64,000 nt of DNA from Octopus sinensis (lineage: Eukaryota), in contig NC_043004.1 in the NCBI RefSeq assembly GCF_006345805.1, positions 51,088,001-51,152,000 on the forward strand, given 5' to 3'. The notes beneath the pieces were generated by a model, which saw only the letters and a program-made list of their open reading frames with translations, did no database searches and was not told the DNA's origin. Every line of letters begins with the position of its first letter. Positions within the stretch are counted from its first letter, which is position 1. Position numbers and translations under genes: made by a program. Below, piece by piece: positions 1-54,907 of the stretch.

Positions 1-342
1 CCATCATCATCATCGCCATCGCCATCGCCATCTCCATCACCATCACCATCACCATCCTCTTCGTCATCGTCATCGCCATCGCTATCGCCATCGCCATCAT
101 CATCATCATCGTCATCGTCATCGTCATCGTCGTCATCATCATCATCATCATCATCATCACCATCACCATCATCACCATCACCATCACCGTCACCACCACC
201 ATCACCTCACCATCATCATCACCATCATCATCATCATCATCATCATCATCACCATCGCCATCGCCATCGCCATCATAATCATCATCATCATCATCATCAT
301 CATCGTCATCGTCTTCGCCATCGCCATCACCATCACCGTCAC

Positions 343-392
<50 letters not shown>

Positions 393-559
393 CCATCACC
401 ATCACCATCATCTTCATCATCACCATCATCATCATCATCATCATCATCATCGCCGTCGCCATCGCCATCACCATCACCATCACCATCATCTTCATCATCA
501 TCATCATCATCATCATCACATCACCATCACCGTCACCATCACCTCACCATCATCATCAC

Positions 560-602
<43 letters not shown>

Positions 603-987
603 GCCATCGCCATCGCCGTCGCCATCGCCATCATCATCATCATCATCATCGCCATCGTCATCGCCATCGCCATCGCCATCACCATCACCGTCACCATCAC
701 CTCACCATCATCATCACCATCATCATCATCATCATCATCATCATCGCCATCGCCATCGTCATCGCCATCGCCATCACCATCACCATCGTCATCGCCATCG
801 TCATCGCCATCGCCATCGCCATCAACATCACCATCACCATCATCATCACCATCATCATCATCATCATCGTCATCGCCATCGCCATCGCCCTCGCCATCAT
901 TATCATCATCATCATCGTCGTCATCGTCATCGCCATGTCCATCACCAACACCATCACCATCACCATCGCCATCACCATCACTATCAC

Positions 988-1022
<35 letters not shown>

Positions 1023-1081
1023 CTATCACCATCATCATCATCATCATCATCATCATTACCATCATCATCACCATCCCCATC

Positions 1082-1113
<32 letters not shown>

Positions 1114-1304
1114 CATCATCATCACCCTCACCATCACCCACACCATCATCATCCTCATCATCGCCATCGCCATCATCATCATCGCCATCGTCATCGTCAT
1201 CGTCGTCGCCGTCGCCGTCACCGTCACCGTCATCGCCATCGCCATCATCATCATCATCATCATCATCACCACCATCATCATCATCATCATCATCATCATC
1301 GTCG

Positions 1305-1350
<46 letters not shown>

Positions 1351-1364
1351 TATTATTATTATTA
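1..1364. repeat. Compound (CAT/CAC/CGC/CGT)n microsatellite ending in (TTA)n
   Basis: Direct reading; yields poly-M/D/I ORFs. Confidence 0.98.
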
Positions 1365-2255
1365 CATATTTGACTTTTGCTTTATATTTGTACAAGTTGG
1401 CTCCAAGTCTCACCCAGAGACCTCAAGAGACAACAGGTTGGAAGTTCACGTTGTTGTTATACCTTGTGTGCCATATATTTGGTTGTTTTTCTGTTTTACT
1501 AGTGGATCTCTAAAAAAAAATGTTTGTTTTAAACCTTGAGATTACATAGAAAGTACTTTGCGTAGGGTATGAGTAGTTCCCATGAGCACTACCTTTTGAA
1601 TTTCTGCCATTTTTGGGTTTCCTGTTAGGTAGCAATCAGCCCCTTTTGCTATCATTCCCAGGGCACCTATGACAACAGGTATTGTTTTAGTCTTCAGGTT
1701 CCACAGTTTGCTGATTTCTATTTCAAGATCTTTATATTTGCTCAGTTTTTGGTAGGTCTTGACAGATACGTTTATATCGATTGGGACAGTCATATCAATG
1801 AGGAGGCATGTTCTTTGTTTGAAGTCTTTCAATATGGTGTCTGGCCTATTTGCATCTATCTTTCTGTCAGTTTGAATGGTGAAGTTCCAGAGGAGTGAGA
1901 TGTGGTCATTTTCAAGCACTGGGGGTGGTTTGTGTTCCCACCAGTTTTTTTCATGGGGAAAATCCAGGTTTTTGCAGATTACCCAGTGAATATATTGTGC
2001 AGTTCTATCATGCCTGTTGAGATACTCTGTAGGCGCTAGAAGACTGCACTTGGAGACCACATGATCAATGGTTTCATTTTGTTGCTGACATACACGACAT
2101 GTTGGGCTACTGCCGATCTTTAATATGTTGGCCTTGTAGTTTCTTGTTGGTAGGCATTGATCTTGAGCTGCTATGATAAACCCTTCTGTTTCAGATTTTT
2201 AGCCAGAGGTCATTAGCCATTGATGGGTCAGGTCTTTGTCAACATCTGCATTTAG

Positions 2256-10995: not shown

Positions 10996-11095
10996 NNNNN
11001 NNNNNNNNNNNNNNNNNNNNNNNNNNNNNNNNNNNNNNNNNNNNNNNNNNNNNNNNNNNNNNNNNNNNNNNNNNNNNNNNNNNNNNNNNNNNNNN
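10996..11095. other. Assembly gap (100 N) between two different SINE fragments
   Basis: N run; round length suggests a placeholder of unknown true size. Confidence 0.99.
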
Positions 11096-12275: not shown

Positions 12276-15200
12276 TGTTACACATTCATATCTATGTGTA
12301 TACGTGGGTATTGAACTCATGCTCGGTACCACAGTATGTGTATATCACAGAGTGATATCTTGCCTGTCAACCTTTACAAAAAGATGTTCCCAGAACACAT
12401 GACACTAGAGGATAAAGTCAAAGAAGGAATCCTCACACCAAGTGATGTAATCCTCACTGCGTACGGAGGTACCAGGATTCCACAACTGAGCAAAACAACA
12501 ATCACAGGGACACACAAAGGAAAAATAATCAAGTGTTCTTTTTATGTCACAAGAACAGAAGGACCAGCATTTCTTGGACTCAATACCTGCAAAAAGCTAA
12601 ATATTGTGTCAATCAATGGTGAAGTGAAGGCAGCTCCGAGCAGGATTGACCACCAATCACAAACAAAGAAGAACTGATAAGCATGTATCCTGAATGCTTT
12701 GATGATACAGTTGGGTGCTTTGTGAAATGTCGATACCATATAAAAGTCGACCCCAATATCAAACCAATTGGTCACCCACCTCGCCGCGTCCCTCTAGAAC
12801 TAAAAGAGAAGCTGAAGGCAGAGTTGGACAGAATGGAAAAAATAGAAATAATCACCAAAGTGACACGACCAACAGACTGGGTGAATTCAATTGTAATCAA
12901 GGAAAAACCCAATGGTACCCTACGGATATGCCTCGACCCAAGGGACCTGAACAAGGCATTAAAAAGAGAGTACCATCCAATTCCAACCCTTGAAGAAATC
13001 ACACCATCATTGGCTGGATCCAAATTATTCAGCAAACTGGATGCCAGTAATGGGTACTGGAATGTAAAGATAGACAAAGAGTCACCCATGCTCACTACCT
13101 TCAACACACCATTTGGCAGATATCGATTCAATCGACTCCCATTTGCATTGAAGGTGAGCCAAGATGTTTTCCAGCGCCAAATAGATGAGACCTACCAAGG
13201 CTGCAAGGGAGCAGTTGGGATAGCAGATGACATCCAAGTGCATGGCAAGGATGAAACCACACATGACTTCAATTTACATGAAGCTATGGAGAAAACCTGA
13301 CAAGCAGGCATCAAACTCAATGCAGACAAGTGTGTGATAAAAGCAAAGGAGTGCAAATTCTTTGGAATTATATACTCTGCAGAGGGAGTTAAACCAGACC
13401 CCGCTAAAGTGGAAGCCATCAGAGACATCAAAGAACCCAAAGACAAGAAGGAACTCAGGAGCTTCCTGGGACTCATCCACTACATGGGAGCCTTCATACC
13501 CAAGCTGGCCGATCACACTGCAAATCTCCAAGAACTAAACAAAGATGACGTAGAGTTTGATTGGTGTGCTTCACACACACAGGTTTTCAAAGCAATCAAA
13601 AAGCTCATCAGTAAGGAGACAACTCTGCAATACTATGACAGACGCAAACCAGTAATACACTCCAAGTCGATGCTTCTATGAGAGGAGTTGGCGCAGCACT
13701 GATACAGGAAGGTAAACCCATTGCATATGCCTCGAAAGCTCTCTCACCCACAGAGACAAGGTACGCAAATATTGAAAGGGAACTCCTGGCAGTAGTATAT
13801 GGATGTGAAAAGTTCCATACATACCTGTATGGCAGACATTTCAATATTGAAACAGACCATCGCCCGCTAGAACAAATACATAGAAAAAACCTCACGAAAG
13901 CACCAGCCAGACTGAAAAGATTACTGTTAAGGCTTCAAACATACGACTATGACATCAGGTACAAGCCAGGAAAAGACCTGATATTGGCGGATGCTCTTTC
14001 CAGACTATCCTCACATGATAAACAGGAGATGGAAGGACTAAGCATAAAGGTTCACCACATTGTAAATGTAACAACCACAAAGCTAGCAGAAATCAAAGAG
14101 GAGACCAGCAAAGATGAAGAACTGCTGCTCCTTACTCAGATGGTGATTCAGGGGTGGCCAAAACAATCACTACAGTGGCTCGAGGACTTCCAGCAGAGCA
14201 AGGAATACCAGAGCAGATCATATGTGACAATGGAACCCAGTTCCCATCGCAAGAATTCAAAAAGCTAGTCGATGAGTATGGGTTCAATATTACAACCTCA
14301 TCTCCACACTACCCCAAAGGTCATGGGTTTATAGAAAGATAGGTGCAGACAGTGAAGCGAACACTAGTCAAATGCCGAGAGACTAAGGAAGACCCACACC
14401 TGGCACTTCTGTCCCTACTGAGAGCTGACATGAAATCCCCAGCAGAATTGCTGAATGGCAGGAAGTACAAAACTACCCTGCCAACTAAGATCCAACCTCC
14501 TATTGACCAGGAAGGGACGGGGGCAAAGCTAGCAGCCACTCAAGAACAATCACAGAAATATTACAACAAACATGCACAATATTTACCTGAGATACTTGGA
14601 GGACAACATGTGCATACTCAAGATCCATAACTAAAACATGGATCCCAGCACGGGTTGTCAGTAGAGCTAAAACTCCAAGATCGTATATAATAGAAACGGA
14701 ATCTGGTAGGCAGCTGAGACGCAACAGGGCCCACATCCGCCCAACACCAAAGCTGTCGAGGACAACGTGTACAACACCTGCTGCATCAGTGACAACACCC
14801 ACAGAATCATCACCCCAACGGGCACCAACCACCCATCAGTAGCCCAATAACACACCTCAGACACCGGTGCGAAGCACAAGATCCACCAGATGAAGATCGA
14901 ACATTCTGCCACCGGTTCGACACCGTTAAAGAAAAAAAAAAAGAAAATGAAAAGATAAATAACTAATTCTACTAGATTACAAAGCAGAGGCAGAATAATC
15001 TCACGGTTTCTGCTGCAGGATTGCCACCTCGCGCTGACAATCCATTAGAGTAAGGGAGACTACTTGTATTTGTCTTCACTGCCAAAAGACCCCTTTATTT
15101 TTTTCAAGAAGAAGGGATGTTACACATTCATATCTATGTGTATACGTAGGTATACGTGTGTAGAATACATCCCCACTTTTGGCACTATTTTGTTAGTAAA

Positions 15201-41282: not shown

Positions 41283-41758
41283 TGTATTAAACCTTAGGCA
41301 AGGCTCACCATTCAACTTTATATAAATACCTTAGTATATTTAATTACAGCTTTAAAATTATGAATTCTTATTATCATAAGATTATCCCTGATCTCCAAAC
41401 CATGCGGTTGTGAAATACTTAACAACACAACCTGCCTGCACCTTGCCATCTATTCAGTCAGGACTAAGCTAGACTAAGCCACAACATCACCATCACTGTT
41501 GCTGCCAACCACCACCACCACCACCACCACCACCACCACCACTACTACTACTACGACAGCTGCTGCTACAGCTACTACTATTACACCACTACCACCTACT
41601 ACTGCTACTTGTACACCTACAACTACTACCATCGACTACTACTACTATTAATACTACCACCACCACCATTACCTACTACTACGACTACTACTACTATGAC
41701 TACGACTACTACGACTACTACTACTACAGATACTACTACTACTACTACTACTACTAAC

Positions 41759-41921
41759 CTGGCATCCATTCAACAAACATATTGAAGTGGCAGCCTTGCC
41801 GTGTGGCACCCATGATCCGTACAACATTGGGATGATTCAGTGCAGCTATCATGTGAATCTCCTCCGTGACATCTTGGATCACCTTCTCCTGCTCTTCTTC
41901 CGTGTTCCGACAGAAGGAAAT
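41759..41921 (-). CDS. MAP3K1: MAP3K1 exon 8 in window (163 bp; ISFCRNTEEEQEKVIQDVTEEIHMIAALNHPNVVRIMGATRQGCHFNMFVEWMP)
   Basis: atcatttcag acceptor, gttagt donor; alphaC helix and hinge; phase 0 to 1. Confidence 0.97.
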
Positions 41922-43033
41922 CTGAAATGATAAAGAAGGAGAAATAATCATCATTAAACCAATTGGTTAAGTAAATATCTAAACAAAGCATGTTAACGAA
42001 TCTCTTATCATTCAGATGCCAGTGCCCCATAAAAAGCACTATCCAAAACGTGATCAAGGCCAGGCCCACCTGACTGGCCCCTGTCCCAGTGGCAGTTAAA
42101 AAGCACCCACTACACTCTCGGAGTGGTTGGCATTAGGAAGAGCATCCAGCTGTAGAAACCTTGCCAGATCAGATTGGAGCCTGGTGTGGCCTCCTGGCTT
42201 TCTAGACCTCAGTCAAACCATCCAACCCATGCCACTATGGAAAACGGATGTTAAACGATGATGAAGCTGGCTTCGCAACTACATGGTTCCAAGTTCAGTT
42301 CCATTACACTGCACTTCCAGCAAGTGTTGTCTGCTACAGCCTTGGGCTGACAAAAGCCCCATGAGGGGATTTGAGAGACACACTAAAAAGAACACGTTAT
42401 TCATTCACTCATTCATGCATGCATACTTACATACATGAGTATACACACGTTCTCTTTTTTTCTTCTTTTTTTCTGTCATTTTTTTTTTACCTGTCACTAG
42501 ACTATGACCATGCTGGAGCACCACCTTGAATTTTTAGTTGAATGAATCAACTCCAGGACCTATTTTTTAAAGCCTGGTAATTATTTCATCAGACTCTTTT
42601 CTTAAACCGCTAAATTATGAGGATGCAAACACACCACACTGGCTGTCAAGGGGGGACAAACACAGACATGAAGTCACACACACACACACACATATATGAG
42701 GGGCTTCTTCTCGCTTCCGTCTACTAAATCTACTCACAAGGTTTTGGTCAGCCAAAGGCTATAGTAGAAGACACTAACCCAAGGTGCCATGCAGTGGGAC
42801 TGAACCTGGAACCATGCAATTGGGAAGCAAGCCTATTACCATGTATATGTATATATATATATAATTAATAAAAACAGCTGTTTGCAACATTACACCATAA
42901 AGAAAAATTATAGTCATCATCTAAACTTAACTAACACCTACATTGCTTGAAATAGGAGTTAAAATGCTACAATGCTGTTACAAAGCACGTGACATACTCT
43001 GATAGGGGCGGCAATCACACCGAACGAAGAGTT

Positions 43034-43085
43034 CCTTAAACTGACCGGCCAGTTTCGGCTATTTCCATAGCCATCTTCAGTAAGG
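43034..43085 (-). ncRNA. Type I hammerhead ribozyme fold, intronic, sense to MAP3K1
   Basis: CCUUA-CUGAAGA-U-GGCUAU(GGAA)AUAGCC-GAAA-CUGG(CCGG)UCAG-UU|UAAGG: complete core and three paired stems. Confidence 0.8.
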
Positions 43086-43679
43086 CCGGCTCATTTGGCT
43101 GATTCCAGGCAACCTCGCCTATCAGAGTATATATATATTCACCATAAAAATCTATGGATGATTTAGCAGATCGCTAATGTGTATACAAAAATTAATAAAA
43201 GCAGCTGTTTGAAACATTATACCATAAAGGAAAATTATAGTCGTCAACTATACTTGACTAAGGGCATGAATAACACACATATATGCCGCCCTCATATATA
43301 TATATATATAAAGAATAATCAGCCGAAATTGTGAGGATAATCTGGTGCTTGACTGAAGAAAGAAAACTTCGAATGACCCGTTCTTGTTTTCATTGGAATG
43401 TAGAGAACAAAAATAAATTCACATTTTGAACCTGAGAAAAGTCTTGCACAGTTTTACTGCTCCACTTAGATATAGTTTTTGTAATGTACATGTTAGCTGG
43501 TTGATTTCATTCTCTGAAAATTTTTTAAATACCCAGAAAAATATTGGTGTTGCTTTGGCATGTGATCTACAACTTACAGGGTGATTGCTGTAAGTTATTG
43601 TTTAGTTTACTTTTCAATTTCTAAAGGAAAAAAACCATGACATTTTGATTCGGTTAACTGATGCCGCTTATCGTAAAAG

Positions 43680-43955
43680 AAAGATTGCAATGGATTTTGT
43701 TATTTAAATCAGTATAATAGAATAGAACCATTTCCTGTTTGGATAGACTGATAAGTTTGGCAGCTGCAAGTTTAGAAAACATAAAGCTGGCAAGATTTCA
43801 CCGGTTTTCCCTTTTCTTTGGGGATCTTTCATTTCTCCACCACAAAGATGACATCGTGCAACATTTTCTTCATCATCTAAACGACCATTTTCTCATAAAA
43901 ACGCAACTGCCTTTGTCTCTTCACTGATCTTACTGTTAAAATCTTTAGCCAACAT
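43680..43955 (-). mobile_element. Merlin/IS1595-like transposase N-terminal remnant
   Basis: MLAKDFNSKISEETKAVAFL*ENGRL...ARCHLCGGEMK...then CQTYQSIQTGN after a frameshift; zinc-ribbon pattern. Confidence 0.5.
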
Positions 43956-44587
43956 CTTACAGGTTTTTAGTGGCACCAAAAAATCACTATATGCTTGTAG
44001 ATGCATATTGAAAAGGTTCATCTTCAACTAGATATTGATATTGAAGCAATTTCTTCCAGATCTACACAGATTGGAAGACATAGAATATATTTGTCTTGAA
44101 AACGTCACATTTGCTTTCGTCAGGCACATCACAAAAGGCAAATAAGAACTGTGACTATTGACATTATTGTCCAACGAATTCATTAGCATATTTTTGAAAT
44201 TTTAAAAATAAGTTTAAATAAATACGATGAAGCTTTTGATGCTGCTCTGGTGAAAATTCTGAGTAATTAGCAGATAATATTTTCAGGTGAAAAAAGTTAT
44301 TTTGGGCAATGTTTTGTATGTTTACACATTTTTGGATCCTCTTAAAAATATTCAACATACGTTCCAGATAAAATTCTTTTAGTTTAATAGGGTAGTCAAA
44401 CTTTACTGGGAAAAATAAATCAATATAATTCTTGTCAGTGTTCAAGATTTACAGATTGGATATTTCATTGGGGTCTGTCTGCTGTGTACGCTTTGGGAGA
44501 GTGGCAGGAGGACATTATAGGGAAGTTACACTGTCTGGAGATGTTACAAGAGGAGACAACTCTGTTTGAATTACCCAAACAATCTTA

Positions 44588-44790
44588 CAGTTCTTTAGTT
44601 CTCCACTACACACCTAATCCATCACCCACCTAACGATGTGTCTATATATCCTACCTACTGCTACAGGCAAACCTAACTCTTACCAGCATTGCTTCAAAGA
44701 GAAAGTGGAGTGGGAAGAAGCAGTATGGCCAAGTCTATTGAAGCATCAGCAAAGCAAATGCTTTCTCTCTCTCTCTCTCGATCTACTCCA
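44588..44790 (+). pseudogene. Inverted, decayed duplicate of MAP3K1 exon 6 with upstream intron flank and acceptor
   Basis: Aligns to 49707->49508; 50/61 identical over the exon start; shared intronic words cagttctttagtt and atccatcacccacct; deletion breaks the frame. Confidence 0.9.
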
Positions 44791-44965
44791 AGAGGAGACA
44801 ACTTCGTCTCTAAACGTCAATTATAACGTACAGGTCCAACACTAATACCTTTCCATACTATTGATTTTGCCAAACCGTTAAAATTACTTGAAATGAAATA
44901 CAAGTGCTTGCACATTAGTATAGTGTACTTGTTCATTAGTACAAACGATACAAGCTAATTAATAC

Positions 44966-45196
44966 TTATTTCTTTATTACCCACAAGGGGCTAAACACAG
45001 AGGGGACAAACAAGGACAGACAAACGGATTAAGTCGATTACATCGACCCCAGTGCGTAACTGGTACTTAATTTATCGACCCCGAAAGGATGAAAGGCAAA
45101 GTCGACCTCGGCGGAATTTGAACTCACAACGTAACGCAGACGAAATACCACTAAGCATTTCGCCCGGCGTGTTAACGTTTGTGCCAGATTGCCGCC
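44966..45196 (-). mobile_element. SINE family B with 16-bp TSD acaagctaattaatac
   Basis: TSD at 44950-44965 and 45197-45212; similar minus copies at 54032-54256 and 61441-61672. Confidence 0.9.
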
Positions 45197-45675
45197 ACAA
45201 GCTAATTAATACTGTACTGTGCAATGTTCTAGTCTGTGCAAGATACCAGTAAGCTAATATGGTAGCCACAAGAATTTGAGGTTCGTTCCTGGTCATGAAT
45301 TAGTGTGGATTATAAAAGGTTCTGGATCATCAATATCCAGAATGTCAGTGTTGTACCTGCAGTAATGAACCCTAGGGAGAGCTGAGCAGCAGAAAGTCTT
45401 CAGTGAAATAACTCCATACTCCTAATTCAAGTGTTTTGGCCCTTAACTCCTTATACTCTAAGGGAACTGGTTCATATCCAGGTCATGACTCCTGGATATC
45501 CTCTCTACTGTCACATATGGTGGTGCTATTTTCATTTTGACCTGCTACTTCCTCTAATAAGACATGAACTGACCCTGGAGCTAAACAATAAGTGTATAAC
45601 AATTGGATTCGATCCTGTGTTCTCCATATAGCAATTACATTTCAATCACATGCACAAGCCTAATTGGTATATAAA

Positions 45676-45910
45676 GGCGGTGAGCTGGCAGAAACGTTAG
45701 CATGCCGGGCGAAATGCTTAGCGGTATTTCGTCTGCTGTTACGTTCTGAGTTCAAATTCCACCGAGGTCGACTTTGCATTTCATCCTTTCGTGGTCGATT
45801 AAATAAGTACCAGTTACGCACTGGGGTCGATATAATCGACTTAATCCGTTTGCCTGTCCTTGTTTGTCCTCTCTGTGTTTAGCCCCTTGTGGGTAGTAAA
45901 GAAATAGGTA
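45676..45910 (+). mobile_element. SINE family B (ggcggtgagctggcagaa head, aaagaaata tail)
   Basis: Other plus-strand copies at about 10318-10535, 11580-11835, 60976-61180 (TSD agttagataa). Confidence 0.85.
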
Positions 45911-46234
45911 TACAATCACTGATTGCTGCTCATGTTATAGTTCAATGGCTCATCTACACATTCTGTGGACTCAGCATATAAACACAATCAAATTTGTTGC
46001 CAATTTCATAGAGTGTCAAGACATCTGAGCTGCCATAACCCTAACCCCATTATTGCCACCTTCGGACTGTTCCATTTTCCCGTTGGCATTCACTCTCCTC
46101 ATGACACTGCGAATATGGATTTGATGTGTAAAAATGAACCCGAATTTCTAACAAAGACTTTCTGCATGTGTCACATACATTGTTTCATTTGAATATTTAT
46201 TTGCTTGTAATAAATCTTCTCTATTAAATCATCA

Positions 46235-46600
46235 TCATTGTTTAACGTCCGCTTTCCATGCTAGCATGGGTTAGACGGTTCAACTGGGGTCTGGGAAGCC
46301 CGAAGGCTGCACCAGGCCAGTCAGATCTGGCAGTGTTTCTACAGCTGGATGCCCTTCCTAACGCCAACCATGAGTGTAGTGGGTGCTTTATATGTGCCAC
46401 CGACACAGGTGCCAGACGAGGCTGGCGAACGGCCACGCTTGGATGGTGTTTTTTACGTGCCACCGGCACGGAGGCCAGGGAAGGCTGGCACAGCTACGCT
46501 CAGATGGTGTTTGTTACGTGCCACCAGCACGGAGGCCAGTCGATGCAGTACTGGCTACGGCCACGTTTGGATGGTTTTCTTATGTGCCACCGGCACTGGT
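46235..46600 (-). mobile_element. GAT-tailed retroposon family D (gaagggcatccagctgtagaaa core)
   Basis: Other copies at about 11096-11300 (+), 39815-39975 (+), 42075-42263 (+), 24050-24270 (-), 39205-39640 (-), 51270-51705 (-), 62480-62700 (-). Confidence 0.8.
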
Positions 46601-46751
46601 ATCACAAAACTACAAATTCCATTGATGTTCATCGATTTTGATTTGATTCTTTGATTTTTGATTTTTAGATTATGTTCTAAACCATAAAGAGCTCTTCCAA
46701 CGTGTTACAAGTACAACTGAACACATAAACAAACATATATATGACACAAAC

Positions 46752-46891
46752 CTGTTTGACAGCCATTAAGGTCCCAGTCTTCACATCCCTTGCTTGGTAA
46801 CAACTGCTGAATGCTCCTGTCCCTAACAAGTTACTTCGTACCCAATGTACATTCTCTAAGTACAGAGGGCTGTTGTTGTTGTTGCTGTTGT

Positions 46892-46929
<38 letters not shown>

Positions 46930-46997
46930 CTGTTTGGCATAGAAAGCATGCTACTGTGGTTGAATGGACTTGCCAATGGGTGCATATCTGATTGACT
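46752..46997 (-). CDS. MAP3K1: MAP3K1 exon 7 in window (246 bp): poly-S/N tract, kinase Gly-rich loop and catalytic Lys ([26 protein letters not shown])
   Basis: tgtgttgcag acceptor, gtttgt donor, 82 codons; kinase subdomains I-II nearly identical to MEKK1. Confidence 0.97.
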
Positions 46998-47775
46998 CTG
47001 CAACACAAATCAACACAGGTACAGATGAGTAATGATTAAGTAGAGTAATGAGTGATGAGTAATGCAGAAGGTAAGTTAAATTTTTATTATAGGTGCCTTC
47101 TAGTCATATGTTTAAAAAAAAGTTTGCTTTCCAGCCACAAAATTGCAGGTTCACTTCCCACAGCATGGCACCTTGAACAAATGCATCCTGCTATGGATGG
47201 AAGCACTCCGTCGGTTACGACGACGCGGGTTCCGGTTGATCCAAATCAACAGAACAGCCTGCTCGTGAAATTAACGTGTAAGTGGCTGAGCACTCCACAG
47301 ACACGTGTACCCTTAACGTAGTTCTCGGGGATATTCAGCGTGACACAGAGAGTGACAAGGCCGGCGTTTTGAGATACAGGTACAACAGAAACAGGAAGTA
47401 AGAGTGAGAGAAAGTTGTGGTGAAAGAGTACAGCAGGGATCACCATCACCCCCTGCCGGAGCCTCGTGGAGCTTTAGGTGTTTTCGCTTAATAAACACTC
47501 ACAACGCCCGGTCTGGGAATCGAAACCGCGATCCTATGACCGCGAGTCTGCTGCCCTAACCACTGGGCCATTGCACCTCCACTGCATCCTGCTATAGTGC
47601 CAGGCTAACCAAAGCATTGTGAGTGGATTTCCTTAACAGAAGTAATGAAGGACATCCAATCGGAGAAACCATGCCTCGACAGACAGCTGGAGTCTGGACA
47701 GCTCTCTGCTAGCCAGCTTCATGTCAAACTGTCAAACCCATCCCAGCATGGAAAGCAGATGTCAAACAATGATAA

Positions 47776-52200: not shown

Positions 52201-52226
52201 GTGTCAATGCTGAAAGAAACACTTAC

Positions 52227-53747
52227 TTTGGTCCTCGGTTCCACAGGGTGAACCTTTCGGTGTTGCTATCTCTGTTTTGAAAGAGACAGATGGTCCATTG
52301 CTGCCTGTTGGAGAAACAGTGATGTCAGAGAGATCTTCAGTGAGTATGTTGGACGACGAGTGACTGGAGCTGCAGGCAAGAGGAGTAGAGGAGCAATGGC
52401 AGACACTGCTGTTGTTGCTGTCATCAAGGTGGTGCTGCATGGATGAGGACGGTGTTGATGTTGACGGCATGGTCACCATAAACTGAGATCGGTCTCCAGG
52501 GCTGTCCGTGCAGTTGTTCACTTTGGTGGTACACACGATGTTGTGGACTAACTGTTTGTTACTGTTGCTGCTGCTGCTGTTGTTGTTGTTGTTGTTGCAA
52601 CTGCTGTTAGTGCTGATGGTGTTGGTGTTGTTATGATTGTTGTTGCAGGCTGTAATGCTGGAAATCTCTTCGACCTTACATTCACCGGAATGGTCACTGG
52701 TTGCCAGGGTTACAGAGCACTTCACAGAAACATTCTGCAGCTTTGCACAGCTAGCATTAACACCACAGTGGGGATGTTGGGAGCCTAAGTGGGGGTCATA
52801 TTGAAGGTCATTTTGGGAGCTGTGTTGAAGTTCATTCTGGAGGTCATTTGGGGCATCGGTCAAGAGGCCATGTCGAAGTTCATGTCCAGTGTTATTAACA
52901 ATATCCATACAAGAGCTATGTTGATGATTATTTTGGGGGTCATTTTGAAAGCTGTGTTGAGGTGGGTCTTGGTGATTGTCCTTAGATATGTAGGGGTGTG
53001 TCATGGATAGAGGGTCATTAGCTGCACTGTCTAGTGTTGTAGGGAGAGGGAACGGAGAGTCTGGGGGTGTAGAGAGTGGGGTTTCATTGGGTGATGCTGT
53101 GGCTGATGTACCGACACAGCTGGTACCTTGACTGCTCTCAGAATCATGCCACACCTTATTAGCAGTCTCCTCAGTTTGTTTGATTTTGTCGACCATGTGT
53201 GACAGCTTTTTGCGCATTGGTCGCATCAGCTTAGGGTCCACGGCAGTGACGAGTAAATTGTCCAGCTGTATCACAATCTCATCCTGCCCTGCGCTGAATT
53301 TCACACAAATGAAGAAGATACGACGTGCAATTTTTGCTATTCTGGAATGTGCATTACCAACGGCATACGTTGCAAACCTGGCAACAATAACAATCCGACA
53401 GAATTCATTTTGTGAGGAAGAAGAAGAAGGAGGACACGAAGAAGAGGATGTAGGAGGAGGAGATGATGAAGAAGAAGAAGAAGAAGTAGTAGTAGTAGTA
53501 GTAGTGGCAGCAGAAGAAGAAGAAGTCTCAGGAGTATGTGGCTGAGGTAAAGGTGAAGAGTTCAGTTCTTCTTCAGAAGCATCTGGGTCTGGTTCTGGGT
53601 CACGTATAAACTCCCCAGGGAACTCCTCTAGTAATCTGTCCAAGACATACAGCCGCCCCAACAACCACTGCCATCTCACAGTTTTCACTTGATATTCCTG
53701 GAGCACGAGTTTCAGGATGTAAGCCAATCCTCCAAGACCACCAGAGC
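52227..53747 (-). CDS. MAP3K1: MAP3K1 exon 5 in window (1521 bp): end of TOG region plus long S/T/N/Q-rich linker
   Basis: Open frame within ORF 52204-53814; WQWLLGRLYVLDRLLEEFPGEF matches MEKK1 [22 protein letters not shown]; tgtttttcag acceptor, gtaagt donor; phase 1 to 1. Confidence 0.95.
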
Positions 53748-54907
53748 CTGAAAAACAATTGTTCAAAATTTGTGTTTTAATGATAATAACAATAATCCTT
53801 TCTACTATAGGCAAAAGGCCTGGAATTAGTGGGATGGGGGGATGGTCAATTATGTTGACCCTAGTACTTGACTGGAACTTAATTTATCAACCTCAAAAGG
53901 ATGAAAGGATGAAAGTCGACCTCGGTGGAATTTGAACTCAGAATGTGAAGGTATACGAAATGCTGCTAAGCATTCTGCCTGGCATGCCATCAGTTTTCCC
54001 AGCTCACAACCTTATGATGATAATAATAATATATTTCTTTACTACCCACAAGGGGCTAAACATAGAGGGGACAAACAAGGACAGACAAAGGGATTAAGTC
54101 GATTATATCGACCCCAGTGCGTAACTGGTACTTTATTTATCGACCCTGAAAGGATGAAGTGCAAAGTCAACCTCGGCGGAATTTGAACTCGGAACGTAAC
54201 GGCAGACGAAATACGGCTGCGCATTTCGCCCGGTGTGCTAACGTTTCTGCCAGCTCAATAATAATAATAATCATGATGATGATGATGATGAACATTTCTT
54301 TTATTTGCTCCCAGGGCAAAGGATGAAAAGGACAATACAAAGACAGATGTAAAGTGTGGGGGGGGGTACATAATGGAATAAAGTAATAATAAAAACAATA
54401 ATAATAACAATGATGATGATGATGAAAATAATAATAACAACCACAACAACAATAATAAGGACAACACTTGCTTACATCTATCTATCTCTCTGTCTGCTGT
54501 CTTTCTCTTTATATCTATTTATCTATCTATGTATAAATGTGTGTGTGTGTATGTATATATATATATATATATGACTTTTCATGACAATAATTGTTTATGT
54601 GTGTATATGTATCACACACACAATATATATATATGTAAATATCAAGCAACAAGAATGAGTGCTCAACACCACATTGGTGGATAGAATTTCTAGAGTAACA
54701 GACTGATGATGGACAATGATCCTGAAACATGCGTGTCTCTAGATGCAGGCCTGGCTGCTGGGGGTGTTTGTCTCCCCTTCGTAAATGTATATAAGGACAC
54801 AGGGAAAATGTGTTGAAGCCAGCAGGAAGCATTGATGCTTCCTGGGGCTAAACAGCGGTGGTGTAACCCCCTACTGTCACGTTCACGTTAGATTGACAGT
54901 ATACAAC

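What the first reader, a model, noticed from the sequence alone, without database searches (positions are those of the whole stretch)
43034..43085. Apparently intact hammerhead ribozyme on the sense strand of a MAP3K1 intron
Seen: the minus strand reads CCUUA CUGAAGA U GGCUAU-GGAA-AUAGCC GAAA CUGG-CCGG-UCAG UU|UAAGG. That is a 5-bp stem I (extendable by GAG/CUC across an internal loop, 43029-43092), the full CUGANGA and GAAA core, a 6-bp stem II with a GNRA loop, a stem III with a palindromic CCGG loop, and a GUU triplet. Predicted cleavage is between 43039 and 43038. Known: NUH triplets cleave (GUU is slower than GUC), a single extra base between A9 and G10.1 is a tolerated natural variant, and type I hammerheads occur in Penelope-like elements, retrozymes and some vertebrate introns. 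Inference: the nascent kinase pre-mRNA could self-cleave between exons 7 and 8, competing with splicing or releasing a truncated or circular RNA.
Basis: partly seen in the sequence, partly recalled or inferred. Interest (0 to 1): 0.85.

Follow-up and report, generated by a model that had tools for sequence, protein, structure and literature searches.

The report
Retroelement-type hammerhead motif in kinase intron
A complete hammerhead ribozyme motif does sit on the sense strand of an octopus MAP3K1-like intron, but it has the hallmarks of hammerheads carried by Penelope-like retroelements and is most likely a weakly active or inactive relic of a mobile element, not a regulator of the kinase gene.

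Summary
Window 43085-43034 (minus strand) reads helix I (5 bp), CUGAAGA, one extra U, helix II (6 bp, GGAA loop), GAA, helix III (5 bp, CCGG loop), U17, then helix I. The predicted cut is between 43039 and 43038. It is the only such motif in the window, and chance expects about 2e-6 per window and 0.1 per genome. It lies sense-strand in a 4.8 kb GT-AG intron of a MAP3K1-like gene.

No Rfam hammerhead model reaches threshold (best 12 bits). The hammerhead fold is 4.6-6.2 kcal/mol less stable than a competing GCCGGCC/GGCCGGU helix.

The motif fits the published signature of Penelope-like-element (PLE) hammerheads: an unpaired base between A9 and G10.1, a long helix II, a short helix I and a palindromic loop 3. 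These cleave poorly in vitro. The same core and helix II recur in eight eukaryote-like metagenome contigs as minimal PLE-type hammerheads, with none in 596 Gb of prokaryotic genomes.

The motif sits in a 327-nt unit present in about 1.2-1.35 tandem copies between (TA)n tracts, beside SINEs.

It is most likely a retroelement relic and a new member of a known kind. No octopus genome could be searched, so copy number and orthologous conservation are untested.

The parts
43034..43085 (-). Type I hammerhead motif. Helix I 43085-43081 / 43038-43034; core CUGAAGA 43080-43074; unpaired U 43073; helix II with GGAA loop 43072-43057; GAA 43056-43054; helix III with CCGG loop 43053-43040; U17 at 43039. 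Predicted cut between 43039 and 43038.
   Evidence: Direct reading. Only descriptor hit in the window. Weak RAGATH-1-hammerhead alignment over exactly these coordinates, 11.8 bits.
43029..43092 (-). Helix I extended by GAG/CUC across a CCGG/AA internal loop. The 5' GCCGGCC here is also the competitor strand that pairs with GGCCGGU of helix III.
42995..43127 (-). 133-nt imperfect hairpin with the hammerhead at its tip. It is closed by terminal inverted repeats CTCTGATAGGCG / CGCCCCTATCAGAG next to TA dinucleotides. GC 0.52 against 0.39 for the intron.
   Evidence: (MFE -49.8 kcal/mol).
43190..43261 (-). Upstream copy of a 72-nt direct repeat. It marks the start of the 327-nt unit.
   Evidence: Self-BLAST, 88.9% identity over 72 nt. 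The alignment shows weaker similarity extending to about 43293.
42863..42934 (-). Downstream copy of the 72-nt direct repeat. It is a partial second unit, giving about 1.2-1.35 tandem copies with a period of 327 nt.
43294..43310 (.). (AT)n microsatellite bounding the unit on its 5' side in gene orientation.
42844..42863 (.). (TA)n microsatellite bounding the unit on its 3' side in gene orientation.
41922..46751 (-). Host intron (GT...AG, 4,830 nt) of the MAP3K1-like gene. The motif starts 3,666 nt into the intron and lies about 1.1 kb upstream of the 3' splice site.
   Evidence: tblastn of P0001; splice sites read.
46752..47000 (-). Upstream exon, ending ...[24 protein letters not shown] (kinase glycine loop and the lysine-containing AVK motif).
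41757..41921 (-). Downstream exon, starting ISFCRNTEEEQEKV...

Best explanation
The motif is a hammerhead of the Penelope-like-element (PLE) / animal non-LTR retrozyme lineage, carried into the intron by a small non-coding retroelement copy. That copy is a 327-nt unit present in about 1.2-1.35 tandem copies, lying between (TA)n tracts.

In the parent element, such hammerheads are thought to process multimeric element transcripts. [quoted passage not shown]

In this intron only one copy is left. Its sense orientation is incidental. Any self-cleavage of the kinase pre-mRNA is expected to be slow or absent, for three reasons: a strong competing fold, U17 instead of C17, and no recognisable helix I-helix II tertiary contact.

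**Shown:** the motif, its context, the relatives with the same core and helix II, and the energetics.
**Inferred:** the PLE or retrozyme origin, the low activity, and the lack of host function.
For: 1. **Published PLE signature.** The motif meets all four incidental PLE-hammerhead hallmarks listed by Cervera & de la Pena 2014 (PMC4209133):
   - G10.1-C11.1;
   - a long helix II (6 bp) with a short helix I (5 bp);
   - a palindromic 15.2-16.2/loop 3 (CUGGCCGGUCAG is self-complementary with two G.U pairs).
2. **Relatives elsewhere.** The pattern CTGANGA-N-GGCTAT-N4-ATAGCC-GAAAC hit 8 JGI metagenome contigs.
   - All are eukaryote-like: GC 0.36-0.40, microsatellites, no long ORFs.
   - Five of the eight, representing three sequence families, parse as minimal PLE-type hammerheads. 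They have different, compensating helix I sequences (UCAGC/GCUGA, CAGC/GCUG, GGGC/GCCC), an extra C or U, a palindromic ACAUGU/ACGUGU and N17 = A or C.
   - The other three (L003, L005, L007) did not parse cleanly.
   - The same pattern has 0 hits in 596 Gb of prokaryotic genomes and 0 in IMG/VR.
   - One relative (L006) has the head-to-head inverted duplication typical of PLE insertions (PMC8557442).
3. **Insertion context.** There is a 327-nt period with 72-nt direct repeats at 89% identity, (TA)n on both sides and GC of 0.39. PLEs form partial tandems and prefer (TA)n targets. Animal retrozymes are tandem monomers of 150-450 bp with low GC (PMC7229834).
4. **PLEs in octopus.** They are abundant, and some are recently active, in Octopus genomes (PMC13282606; PMC8967140). 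Lineage-derived hammerheads should therefore far outnumber the roughly 0.1 chance motifs expected per genome.
5. **Rfam is uninformative here.** Its models also miss the metagenomic PLE-type relatives, so the lack of an Rfam hit does not argue against this subclass.
6. **Low expected activity.** See the competing fold and the poor in vitro cleavage of PLE hammerheads even with an added helix III.
Against: - No second copy of the unit or of the hammerhead exists in the 64 kb window.
- No octopus genome could be searched, so membership of a repeat family is not shown.
- No RT or GIY-YIG ORF is near the motif. The only RT fragments (12.6-14.3 kb, 1.5-2.2 kb) belong to other retroelement types.
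- Helix III is 5 bp, much longer than the 0-2 bp typical of PLE hammerheads. This motif could therefore work as a monomer, unlike them.
- The hammerhead is in the unique part of the unit, not in the duplicated 72 nt.
- The metagenome relatives were found with a pattern that fixed helix II, so the sharing of helix II is by construction.
- The terminal inverted repeats next to TA would also fit a small DNA-transposon (MITE-like) hairpin.
Confidence: 0.6

Rival explanations
1. It is an active intronic ribozyme. The motif folds co-transcriptionally, cuts the nascent MAP3K1-like pre-mRNA between the exon encoding the glycine loop and AVK lysine and the next kinase exon, and thereby lowers or modulates mRNA output. 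This would be a domesticated hammerhead like those in amniote RECK/CTCL/DTNB introns.
For: - The core is intact and all three helices are available.
- The 5-bp helix III removes the need for dimerisation that limits PLE hammerheads.
- It is in sense orientation inside an intron.
- The 72-nt repeats have diverged by about 11%. Under the same decay about 3 changes would be expected in the 52-nt motif, yet no core position or base pair is broken.
- There is precedent for domesticated intronic type I hammerheads (PMC6155905).
Against: - The hammerhead fold is 4.6-6.2 kcal/mol above the competing fold, and the competitor strand is transcribed first.
- U17 is a slow cleavage-site base (own knowledge of the NUH rule).
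- No recognisable loop 1-loop 2 contact is present, and there is no match to Rfam HH9/HH10 or Hammerhead_1.
- PLE-type motifs cleave poorly even with an engineered helix III.
- The G.U pair in helix III and U17 may themselves be decay products.
- Retrozymes are depleted from introns, which suggests such insertions are tolerated at best (bioRxiv 10.64898/2026.07.22.740005).
- Slow intronic ribozymes do not prevent splicing (exon tethering; own knowledge).
- Conservation is untested.
Confidence: 0.1
2. It is a chance hammerhead look-alike inside an unrelated structured repeat, for example a MITE-like 133-nt hairpin with terminal inverted repeats inserted at TA. On this view the core letters arose by chance in a sequence that already supplied hairpins.
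For: - Terminal inverted repeats CTCTGATAGGCG/CGCCCCTATCAGAG are flanked by TA.
- No Rfam support.
- About 0.1 motifs of this quality are expected per genome under a Markov model, and more in hairpin-rich repeats.
- No other copy is available to show covariation.
Against: - Beyond the generic descriptor, the motif also carries features that were not required to find it and that are specific to PLE hammerheads: the extra base at 9/10.1, a 6-bp helix II with G10.1-C11.1, and a palindromic loop 3.
- The identical core plus helix II recurs in independent eukaryotic minimal hammerheads and never in 596 Gb of prokaryotic DNA.
- The window-level chance expectation is about 2e-6.
Confidence: 0.17
3. 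It is a live non-LTR retrozyme locus that yields a small circular RNA of about 327 nt through hammerhead cleavage and ligation.
For: The unit length of 327 nt, GC of 0.39, more-than-unit copy and self-paired fold (z = -2.6) match the published description.
Against: Only one hammerhead is present in the 1.2-1.35 copies, so a monomer cannot be excised from this locus. The repeats are 11% diverged, so this is an old copy. There is no array.
Confidence: 0.05

Closest known systems
Hammerheads of Penelope-like elements (min-HHRs and their variants with a small palindromic helix III; Cervera & de la Pena 2014, PMC4209133)
   Same: Type I topology. Conserved unpaired nucleotide between A9 and G10.1. 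G10.1-C11.1. Long helix II (6 bp) and short helix I (5 bp) without a defined loop 1. Palindromic 15.2-16.2/loop 3. Host genome rich in PLEs. (TA)n-flanked, more-than-unit copy.
   Different: Helix III is a stable 5-bp hairpin instead of 0-2 bp. N17 is U. No RT/GIY-YIG ORF or recognisable pLTR pair is nearby. Copy number in the genome is unknown.
Metazoan non-LTR retrozymes (Cervera & de la Pena 2020, PMC7229834)
   Same: Unit of about 327 nt. Low GC. Self-paired RNA with a type I hammerhead that has a real helix III. Partial tandem arrangement.
   Different: Only about 1.2-1.35 units and one hammerhead. No array. No evidence of circular RNA. Loop 1-loop 2 contacts are not recognisable.
Conserved intronic hammerheads of amniotes (RECK, CTCL/C10orf118, DTNB; Rfam HH9/HH10)
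   Same: Type I hammerhead on the sense strand of an intron of a protein-coding gene, probably derived from a retroelement.
   Different: Those have canonical loop-loop contacts or pseudoknots, deep orthologous conservation and demonstrated cleavage. None of these is shown here, and the Rfam models do not match.
Eight metagenome contigs L001-L008 with CUGANGA-N-GGCUAU-N4-AUAGCC-GAAAC
   Same: Identical core spacing, extra base and helix II sequence. Where they parse (five contigs), helix I is 4-5 bp with different, compensating sequences.
   Different: Helix III is the bare palindrome ACAUGU/ACGUGU (dimer-dependent). N17 is A or C. They come from unidentified, arthropod-like eukaryotic DNA and share no flanking similarity with the window.

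Membership tests
Hammerhead ribozyme (general) | Core C3-U4-G5-A6-N7-G8-A9 and G12-A13-A14 | tested here: met
   CUGAAGA at 43080-43074 and GAA at 43056-43054.
Hammerhead ribozyme (general) | A15.1-U16.1 pair followed by H17 (not G), and G10.1-C11.1 closing helix II | tested here: met
   A at 43053 pairs with U at 43040; U17 at 43039; G at 43072 pairs with C at 43057.
Hammerhead ribozyme (general) | Three helices around the core forming the preferred fold | tested here: inconclusive
   Helices of 5, 6 and 5 bp can be drawn. The hammerhead fold is not the minimum-free-energy fold and is 4.6-6.2 kcal/mol worse than the competitor. Energy models ignore core tertiary structure.
Hammerhead ribozyme (general) | Match to a curated Rfam hammerhead covariance model at gathering score | tested here: not met
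   0 hits at gathering. Best scores are Hammerhead_3 at 12.2 bits (cut-off 48.5) and RAGATH-1-hammerhead at 11.8 bits (cut-off 56.3). The PLE-type relatives are also missed.
Hammerhead ribozyme (general) | Site-specific self-cleavage giving 2',3'-cyclic phosphate and 5'-OH ends | not testable with these tools
   Needs transcription and cleavage assays or RNA end mapping.
Hammerhead ribozyme (general) | Helix I-helix II tertiary contact for activity at physiological Mg2+ | tested here: inconclusive
   A GGAA loop 2 and a CCGG/AA internal loop in helix I exist, but they match no contact motif I could verify.
PLE-type hammerhead | [quoted passage not shown] | tested here: met
   U at 43073; criterion from PMC4209133.
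PLE-type hammerhead | Long helix II (6-8 bp) with short helix I (4-5 bp) | tested here: met
   6 bp and 5 bp.
PLE-type hammerhead | Palindromic 15.2-16.2 / loop 3 | tested here: met
   CUGGCCGGUCAG is self-complementary with two G.U pairs; loop CCGG.
PLE-type hammerhead | Helix III absent or 1-2 bp (dimer-dependent) | tested here: not met
   Helix III is 5 bp, so this is a variant of the type.
PLE-type hammerhead | Located in the pseudo-LTR of an element encoding RT and GIY-YIG endonuclease | tested here: not met
   No such ORF in the intron. ORFs of 55 aa or more listed. The RT fragments elsewhere are LTR-type and non-LTR-type. A solo pLTR or non-autonomous copy remains possible.
PLE-type hammerhead | Many genomic copies forming families with covariation | not testable with these tools
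   No octopus genome was reachable. Single copy in the window.
Metazoan non-LTR retrozyme | Tandem monomers of 150-450 bp, low GC | tested here: inconclusive
   Period 327 nt, but only about 1.2-1.35 copies. GC 0.39.
Metazoan non-LTR retrozyme | A hammerhead in each monomer, so that a unit can be excised and circularised | tested here: not met
   One hammerhead only.
Domesticated intronic hammerhead (amniote HH9/HH10 type) | Conservation at the orthologous intron across species | not testable with these tools
   The orthologous octopus loci are not on record in the collections.

The most novel reading that the evidence does not exclude
A PLE-derived hammerhead acquired a stable 5-bp helix III, so it can act as a monomer. 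It has been retained on the sense strand of a MAP3K1-like intron in octopods, where slow co-transcriptional cleavage tunes kinase mRNA output. This would be the first domesticated gene-embedded hammerhead in an invertebrate.
Probability: 0.06. Interest if true: 0.7.

Novelty: new member of a known kind. Interest (0 to 1): 0.25.

Why it matters
If the retroelement reading is right, this is ordinary. Type I hammerheads are carried in large numbers by Penelope-like elements and retrozymes in invertebrate genomes, and octopus genomes are rich in PLEs. The copy has two modest uses:
- It documents this hammerhead type in a cephalopod gene.
- It is a natural variant with a long helix III, which could show whether PLE-type cores can cleave as monomers.

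It would matter much more only if the motif proved to be conserved at this intron and active in vivo. It would then extend domesticated intronic ribozymes from amniotes to molluscs.

Tried and rejected
**Tried, led nowhere**
1. **Rfam.** The gathering scan of the whole window gave nothing. The E-value scan of 701 nt gave no hammerhead. On 101 nt there were only sub-threshold hits.
2. **Other copies in the window.** A 32-mer search with 3 mismatches and self-BLAST found none apart from the 72-nt direct repeat.
3. **Octopus copies through the protein databases.**
   - A concatenated six-frame peptide query of the element gave no hit at E <= 10.
   - The O. bimaculoides protein P0001 is not on record for contig look-up.
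   - A kinase-domain query returned only transcripts and other phyla.
   - Exact-ORF look-ups near the motif and at the downstream exon found nothing on record.
4. **Second, minimal hammerhead.** A relaxed descriptor found none in the window.
5. **PLE coding remnants.** None lie near the motif. Pfam on neighbouring broken ORFs found only unrelated RT and RNase H fragments far away.

**Considered and rejected**
- **The type III reading suggested by the Rfam Hammerhead_3 alignment.** It has no helix I hairpin.
- **A plant-type LTR retrozyme.** That needs hammerheads inside both repeats, whereas here the repeats lack it.

Full report
**1. The observation**

On the minus strand the window reads:
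- CCUUA (43085-43081)
- CUGAAGA (43080-43074)
- U (43073)
- GGCUAU-GGAA-AUAGCC (43072-43057)
- GAA (43056-43054)
- ACUGG-CCGG-UCAGU (43053-43040)
- U (43039)
- UAAGG (43038-43034)

Every conserved hammerhead position is present: C3-A9, G12-A14, the A15.1-U16.1 pair, the G10.1-C11.1 pair and a non-G base at position 17. Helix I has 5 Watson-Crick pairs and can be extended by GAG/CUC across a CCGG/AA internal loop (43092-43029). Helix II has 6 pairs. Helix III has 4 Watson-Crick pairs plus one G.U. The cleavage site would be 3' of U17, between 43039 and 43038.

**2. Chance**

A descriptor scan of both strands returned only this site, even at thresholds of 3 bp per helix. The descriptor was helix I, CUGANGA, 0-1 extra base, helix II closed by G-C, GAAA, helix III, UH, helix I. 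A version allowing a missing helix III also returned only this site.

In 758 Mb of first-order Markov sequence with the window's dinucleotide statistics there were 13 hits at >=3/3/3 bp, one at >=4/4/3 and none at >=4/4/4. The loose rate is about 17 per Gb-strand. Each extra required pair costs a factor of about 0.37, so the observed 5/6/5 quality is expected about 0.02 times per Gb-strand. That is about 2e-6 per window and about 0.1 per octopus-sized genome. The last step is an extrapolation, not a count. The motif is far beyond chance for the window and borderline-to-unlikely as a chance event for a whole genome.

**3. Gene context**

The long minus-strand ORF at 52207-53883 is 93% identical to a 914-aa Octopus bimaculoides kinase-domain protein, P0001. 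More distant relatives are named mitogen-activated protein kinase kinase kinase 1 by their sources.

tblastn places P0001 exons at:
- 55145-55080
- 53748-52222
- 49633-49454
- 47000-46749
- 41924-41757
- 39155-39018
- 35754-35608
- 35267-35016
- 30433-30275

All are on the minus strand. The motif lies in the intron 46751..41922, which has GT and AG ends. It is in sense orientation, starting 3,666 nt into the intron and about 1.1 kb upstream of the 3' splice site. The intron splits the kinase domain just after the AVK lysine.

The label 'exons 7 and 8' cannot be checked, because P0001 lacks the N-terminal half. The 93% identity in the low-complexity exon, and small differences elsewhere, suggest an Octopus species other than O. 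bimaculoides.

**4. Curated models**

Rfam gives no hit at gathering thresholds in the whole window and no hammerhead in a 701-nt E-value scan. On 101 nt there are two sub-threshold alignments:
- Hammerhead_3, 12.2 bits (cut-off 48.5), in a register that has no helix I hairpin.
- RAGATH-1-hammerhead, 11.8 bits (cut-off 56.3), over exactly 43085-43034.

By that test the motif is not a recognised member. The same models also fail on clear minimal hammerheads of the Penelope type, so the failure has little weight for this subclass.

**5. Folding**

- **Bare 52-mer.** The hammerhead secondary structure scores -12.4 kcal/mol.
- **Longer contexts.** With 64, 133, 255 or 399 nt of context, a GCCGGCC/GGCCGGU helix forms between the 5' flank and helix III/loop 3. 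It wins by 6.2 kcal/mol in the 64-nt context and 4.6 kcal/mol in the three longer contexts. The hammerhead-compatible ensemble is about 1e-5 to 2e-4 of the total.
- **Order of transcription.** The competitor's 5' strand is made first, and its partner emerges before the 3' strand of helix III.
- **Caveats.** Energy models ignore the tertiary structure of the core. Viroid-like and retrozyme RNAs also bury their hammerheads in more stable folds. This is therefore evidence against efficient cleavage, not proof of inactivity.

**6. What kind of hammerhead**

Cervera & de la Pena (2014, PMC4209133) describe the hammerheads of Penelope-like elements (PLEs) as having:
- a larger than usual helix II (6-8 bp);
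[quoted passage not shown] - the G10.1-C11.1 pair;
- palindromic positions 15.2-16.2, and a palindromic loop 3 when present.

The octopus motif has all of these. The segment CUGGCCGGUCAG is self-complementary with two G.U pairs.

The one departure is helix III, which is a stable 5-bp hairpin rather than 0-2 bp.

The same paper reports three activity results for PLE hammerheads:
- No detectable cleavage for a single motif.
- Low cleavage for dimers.
- Only weak cleavage, mostly at non-physiological Mg2+, when a helix III was engineered in.

**7. Independent relatives**

An exact-pattern scan for CTGANGA-N-GGCTAT-N4-ATAGCC-GAAAC found eight JGI metagenome contigs. It found none in 596 Gb of prokaryotic genomes and none in IMG/VR.

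The contigs are eukaryote-like: GC 0.36-0.40, microsatellites and no long ORFs. One contig carries insect-retroelement-like ORFs; that resemblance is from my own knowledge.

Five of the eight contigs, representing three sequence families, parse as minimal hammerheads:
- helix I of 4-5 bp with different, compensating sequences (UCAGC/GCUGA, CAGC/GCUG, GGGC/GCCC);
- an extra C or U after A9;
- the same helix II;
- GAA;
- the bare palindrome ACAUGU or ACGUGU;
- A or C at position 17.

The other three did not parse cleanly. L003 and L005 had no helix I of 3 bp or more, and L007 gave only an aberrant parse.

One contig (L006) carries a near-perfect inverted duplication that includes the 5' half of its hammerhead. 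This is the head-to-head arrangement described for PLE insertions (PMC8557442).

Helix II identity is by construction of the pattern. The rest of the architecture was not imposed, and it places the octopus core among natural retroelement hammerheads.

**8. The carrier sequence**

- **Hairpin.** The motif is at the tip of a 133-nt imperfect hairpin (43127-42995, -49.8 kcal/mol, GC 0.52), closed by CTCTGATAGGCG/CGCCCCTATCAGAG next to TA.
- **Direct repeats.** Two 72-nt direct repeats (43261-43190 and 42934-42863, 88.9% identical) define a period of 327 nt. Weaker similarity extends the upstream copy to about 43293. About 1.2-1.35 tandem units are therefore present.
- **Flanks and composition.** (AT)n at 43294-43310 and (TA)n at 42844-42863 flank the unit. 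The unit has GC 0.39 and folds somewhat better than shuffles (z = -2.6).
- **Published parallels.**
  - Animal non-LTR retrozymes are tandem monomers of 150-450 bp with low GC and a type I hammerhead (PMC7229834).
  - PLEs form partial tandems.
  - PLEs prefer (TA)n targets.
  - PLEs often carry a 30-40 bp tail at one end.
  - A 2026 preprint argues that animal retrozymes are non-autonomous derivatives of PLE pLTRs.
- **PLEs in octopus.** They are abundant, and some are recently active, in Octopus genomes: 31 recently active families in O. vulgaris (PMC13282606; see also PMC8967140).
- **Age.** The 11% divergence of the repeats corresponds to a Jukes-Cantor distance of about 0.12, or about 0.06 per copy. 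On the calibration quoted this is roughly 15-20 million years. This is a rough inference.
- **Neighbours.** Immediately downstream lies a tRNA-derived SINE-like element, with an inverted relative further on. The intron is a typical transposable-element landing zone.

**9. Best explanation and rivals**

- **Best explanation (confidence about 0.6).** A retroelement-lineage (PLE/retrozyme-type) hammerhead was brought in by a small non-coding element copy and is now a solitary relic. Sense orientation is a coin flip. A single site cannot release a unit-length or circular RNA. Cleavage of the pre-mRNA, if any, should be slow, and slow intronic ribozymes are known not to block splicing (own knowledge of exon-tethering work).
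It keeps some probability because helix III is stable and no core position or pair has decayed. About 3 substitutions would be expected in 52 nt over the age of the repeats, so survival of all constrained positions has roughly a 6% chance under neutrality. However, U17 and the G.U pair may be just such changes.
- **Chance motif in a MITE-like hairpin (about 0.17).** It cannot be excluded without copies from the genome.
- **Live circular-RNA-producing retrozyme locus (about 0.05).** This is unlikely with one hammerhead.

**10. Limits**

No octopus genome or repeat library could be searched with the tools at hand. All protein-based routes to orthologous or paralogous DNA failed. Three things are therefore untested and are the decisive next steps:
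- copy number, family assignment and orthologous conservation;
- activity in vitro;
- RNA ends in vivo.

**11. Verdict**

Its most likely nature is already well known: a hammerhead carried by Penelope-like or retrozyme elements, widespread in invertebrates. It is a new member of a known kind, and interest is low to moderate.

Noticed in passing
window 42480-42835 (-) and about 42040-42340: A tRNA-derived SINE-like element, with a B-box-like GGTTCAGTCCC and an A-rich tail, lies directly downstream of the hammerhead unit. A related copy in inverted orientation lies further on in the same intron.
   Followed up: partly
window 12650-14265 (+): Broken LTR-retrotransposon pol: RVT_1 (E = 3.6e-12) at 12650-13297 and RT_RNaseH (E = 7e-29) at 13639-14265.
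   Followed up: partly
window 1545-2198 (-): ORF with a weak zf-RVT match (24.4 bits, below the cut-off of 27.5). It is probably the C-terminal part of a non-LTR retrotransposon RT.
   Followed up: partly
window 10996-11095: A run of 100 N, which is an assembly gap.
   Followed up: no
window 43700-43960 (-): A frame-shifted ORF (…CHLCGGEMKDPQRKGK… then …FSKLAAAKLISLSKQEMVLFYY…) that from memory resembles the zinc-ribbon N-terminus of an IS1595/ISXO2-like transposase. Pfam gave no hit.
   Followed up: partly
window 1-1536 and 41541-41756: Long trinucleotide arrays. The (ACT)n array at 41541-41756 starts immediately after the exon that ends at 41757. The first 1.5 kb of the window is His/Ser-like low-complexity repeat.
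   Followed up: no
L006 769-863: A metagenome contig with a near-perfect inverted duplication that includes the 5' half of its minimal hammerhead. Rfam reports it as a spurious miRNA-precursor match. This resembles the head-to-head arrangement described for Penelope-like insertions.
   Followed up: partly
window 52222-53748 (-): The large low-complexity exon is only 93% identical to the O. bimaculoides protein, while the kinase exons are 96-100% identical. This suggests the window comes from another Octopus species.
   Followed up: no
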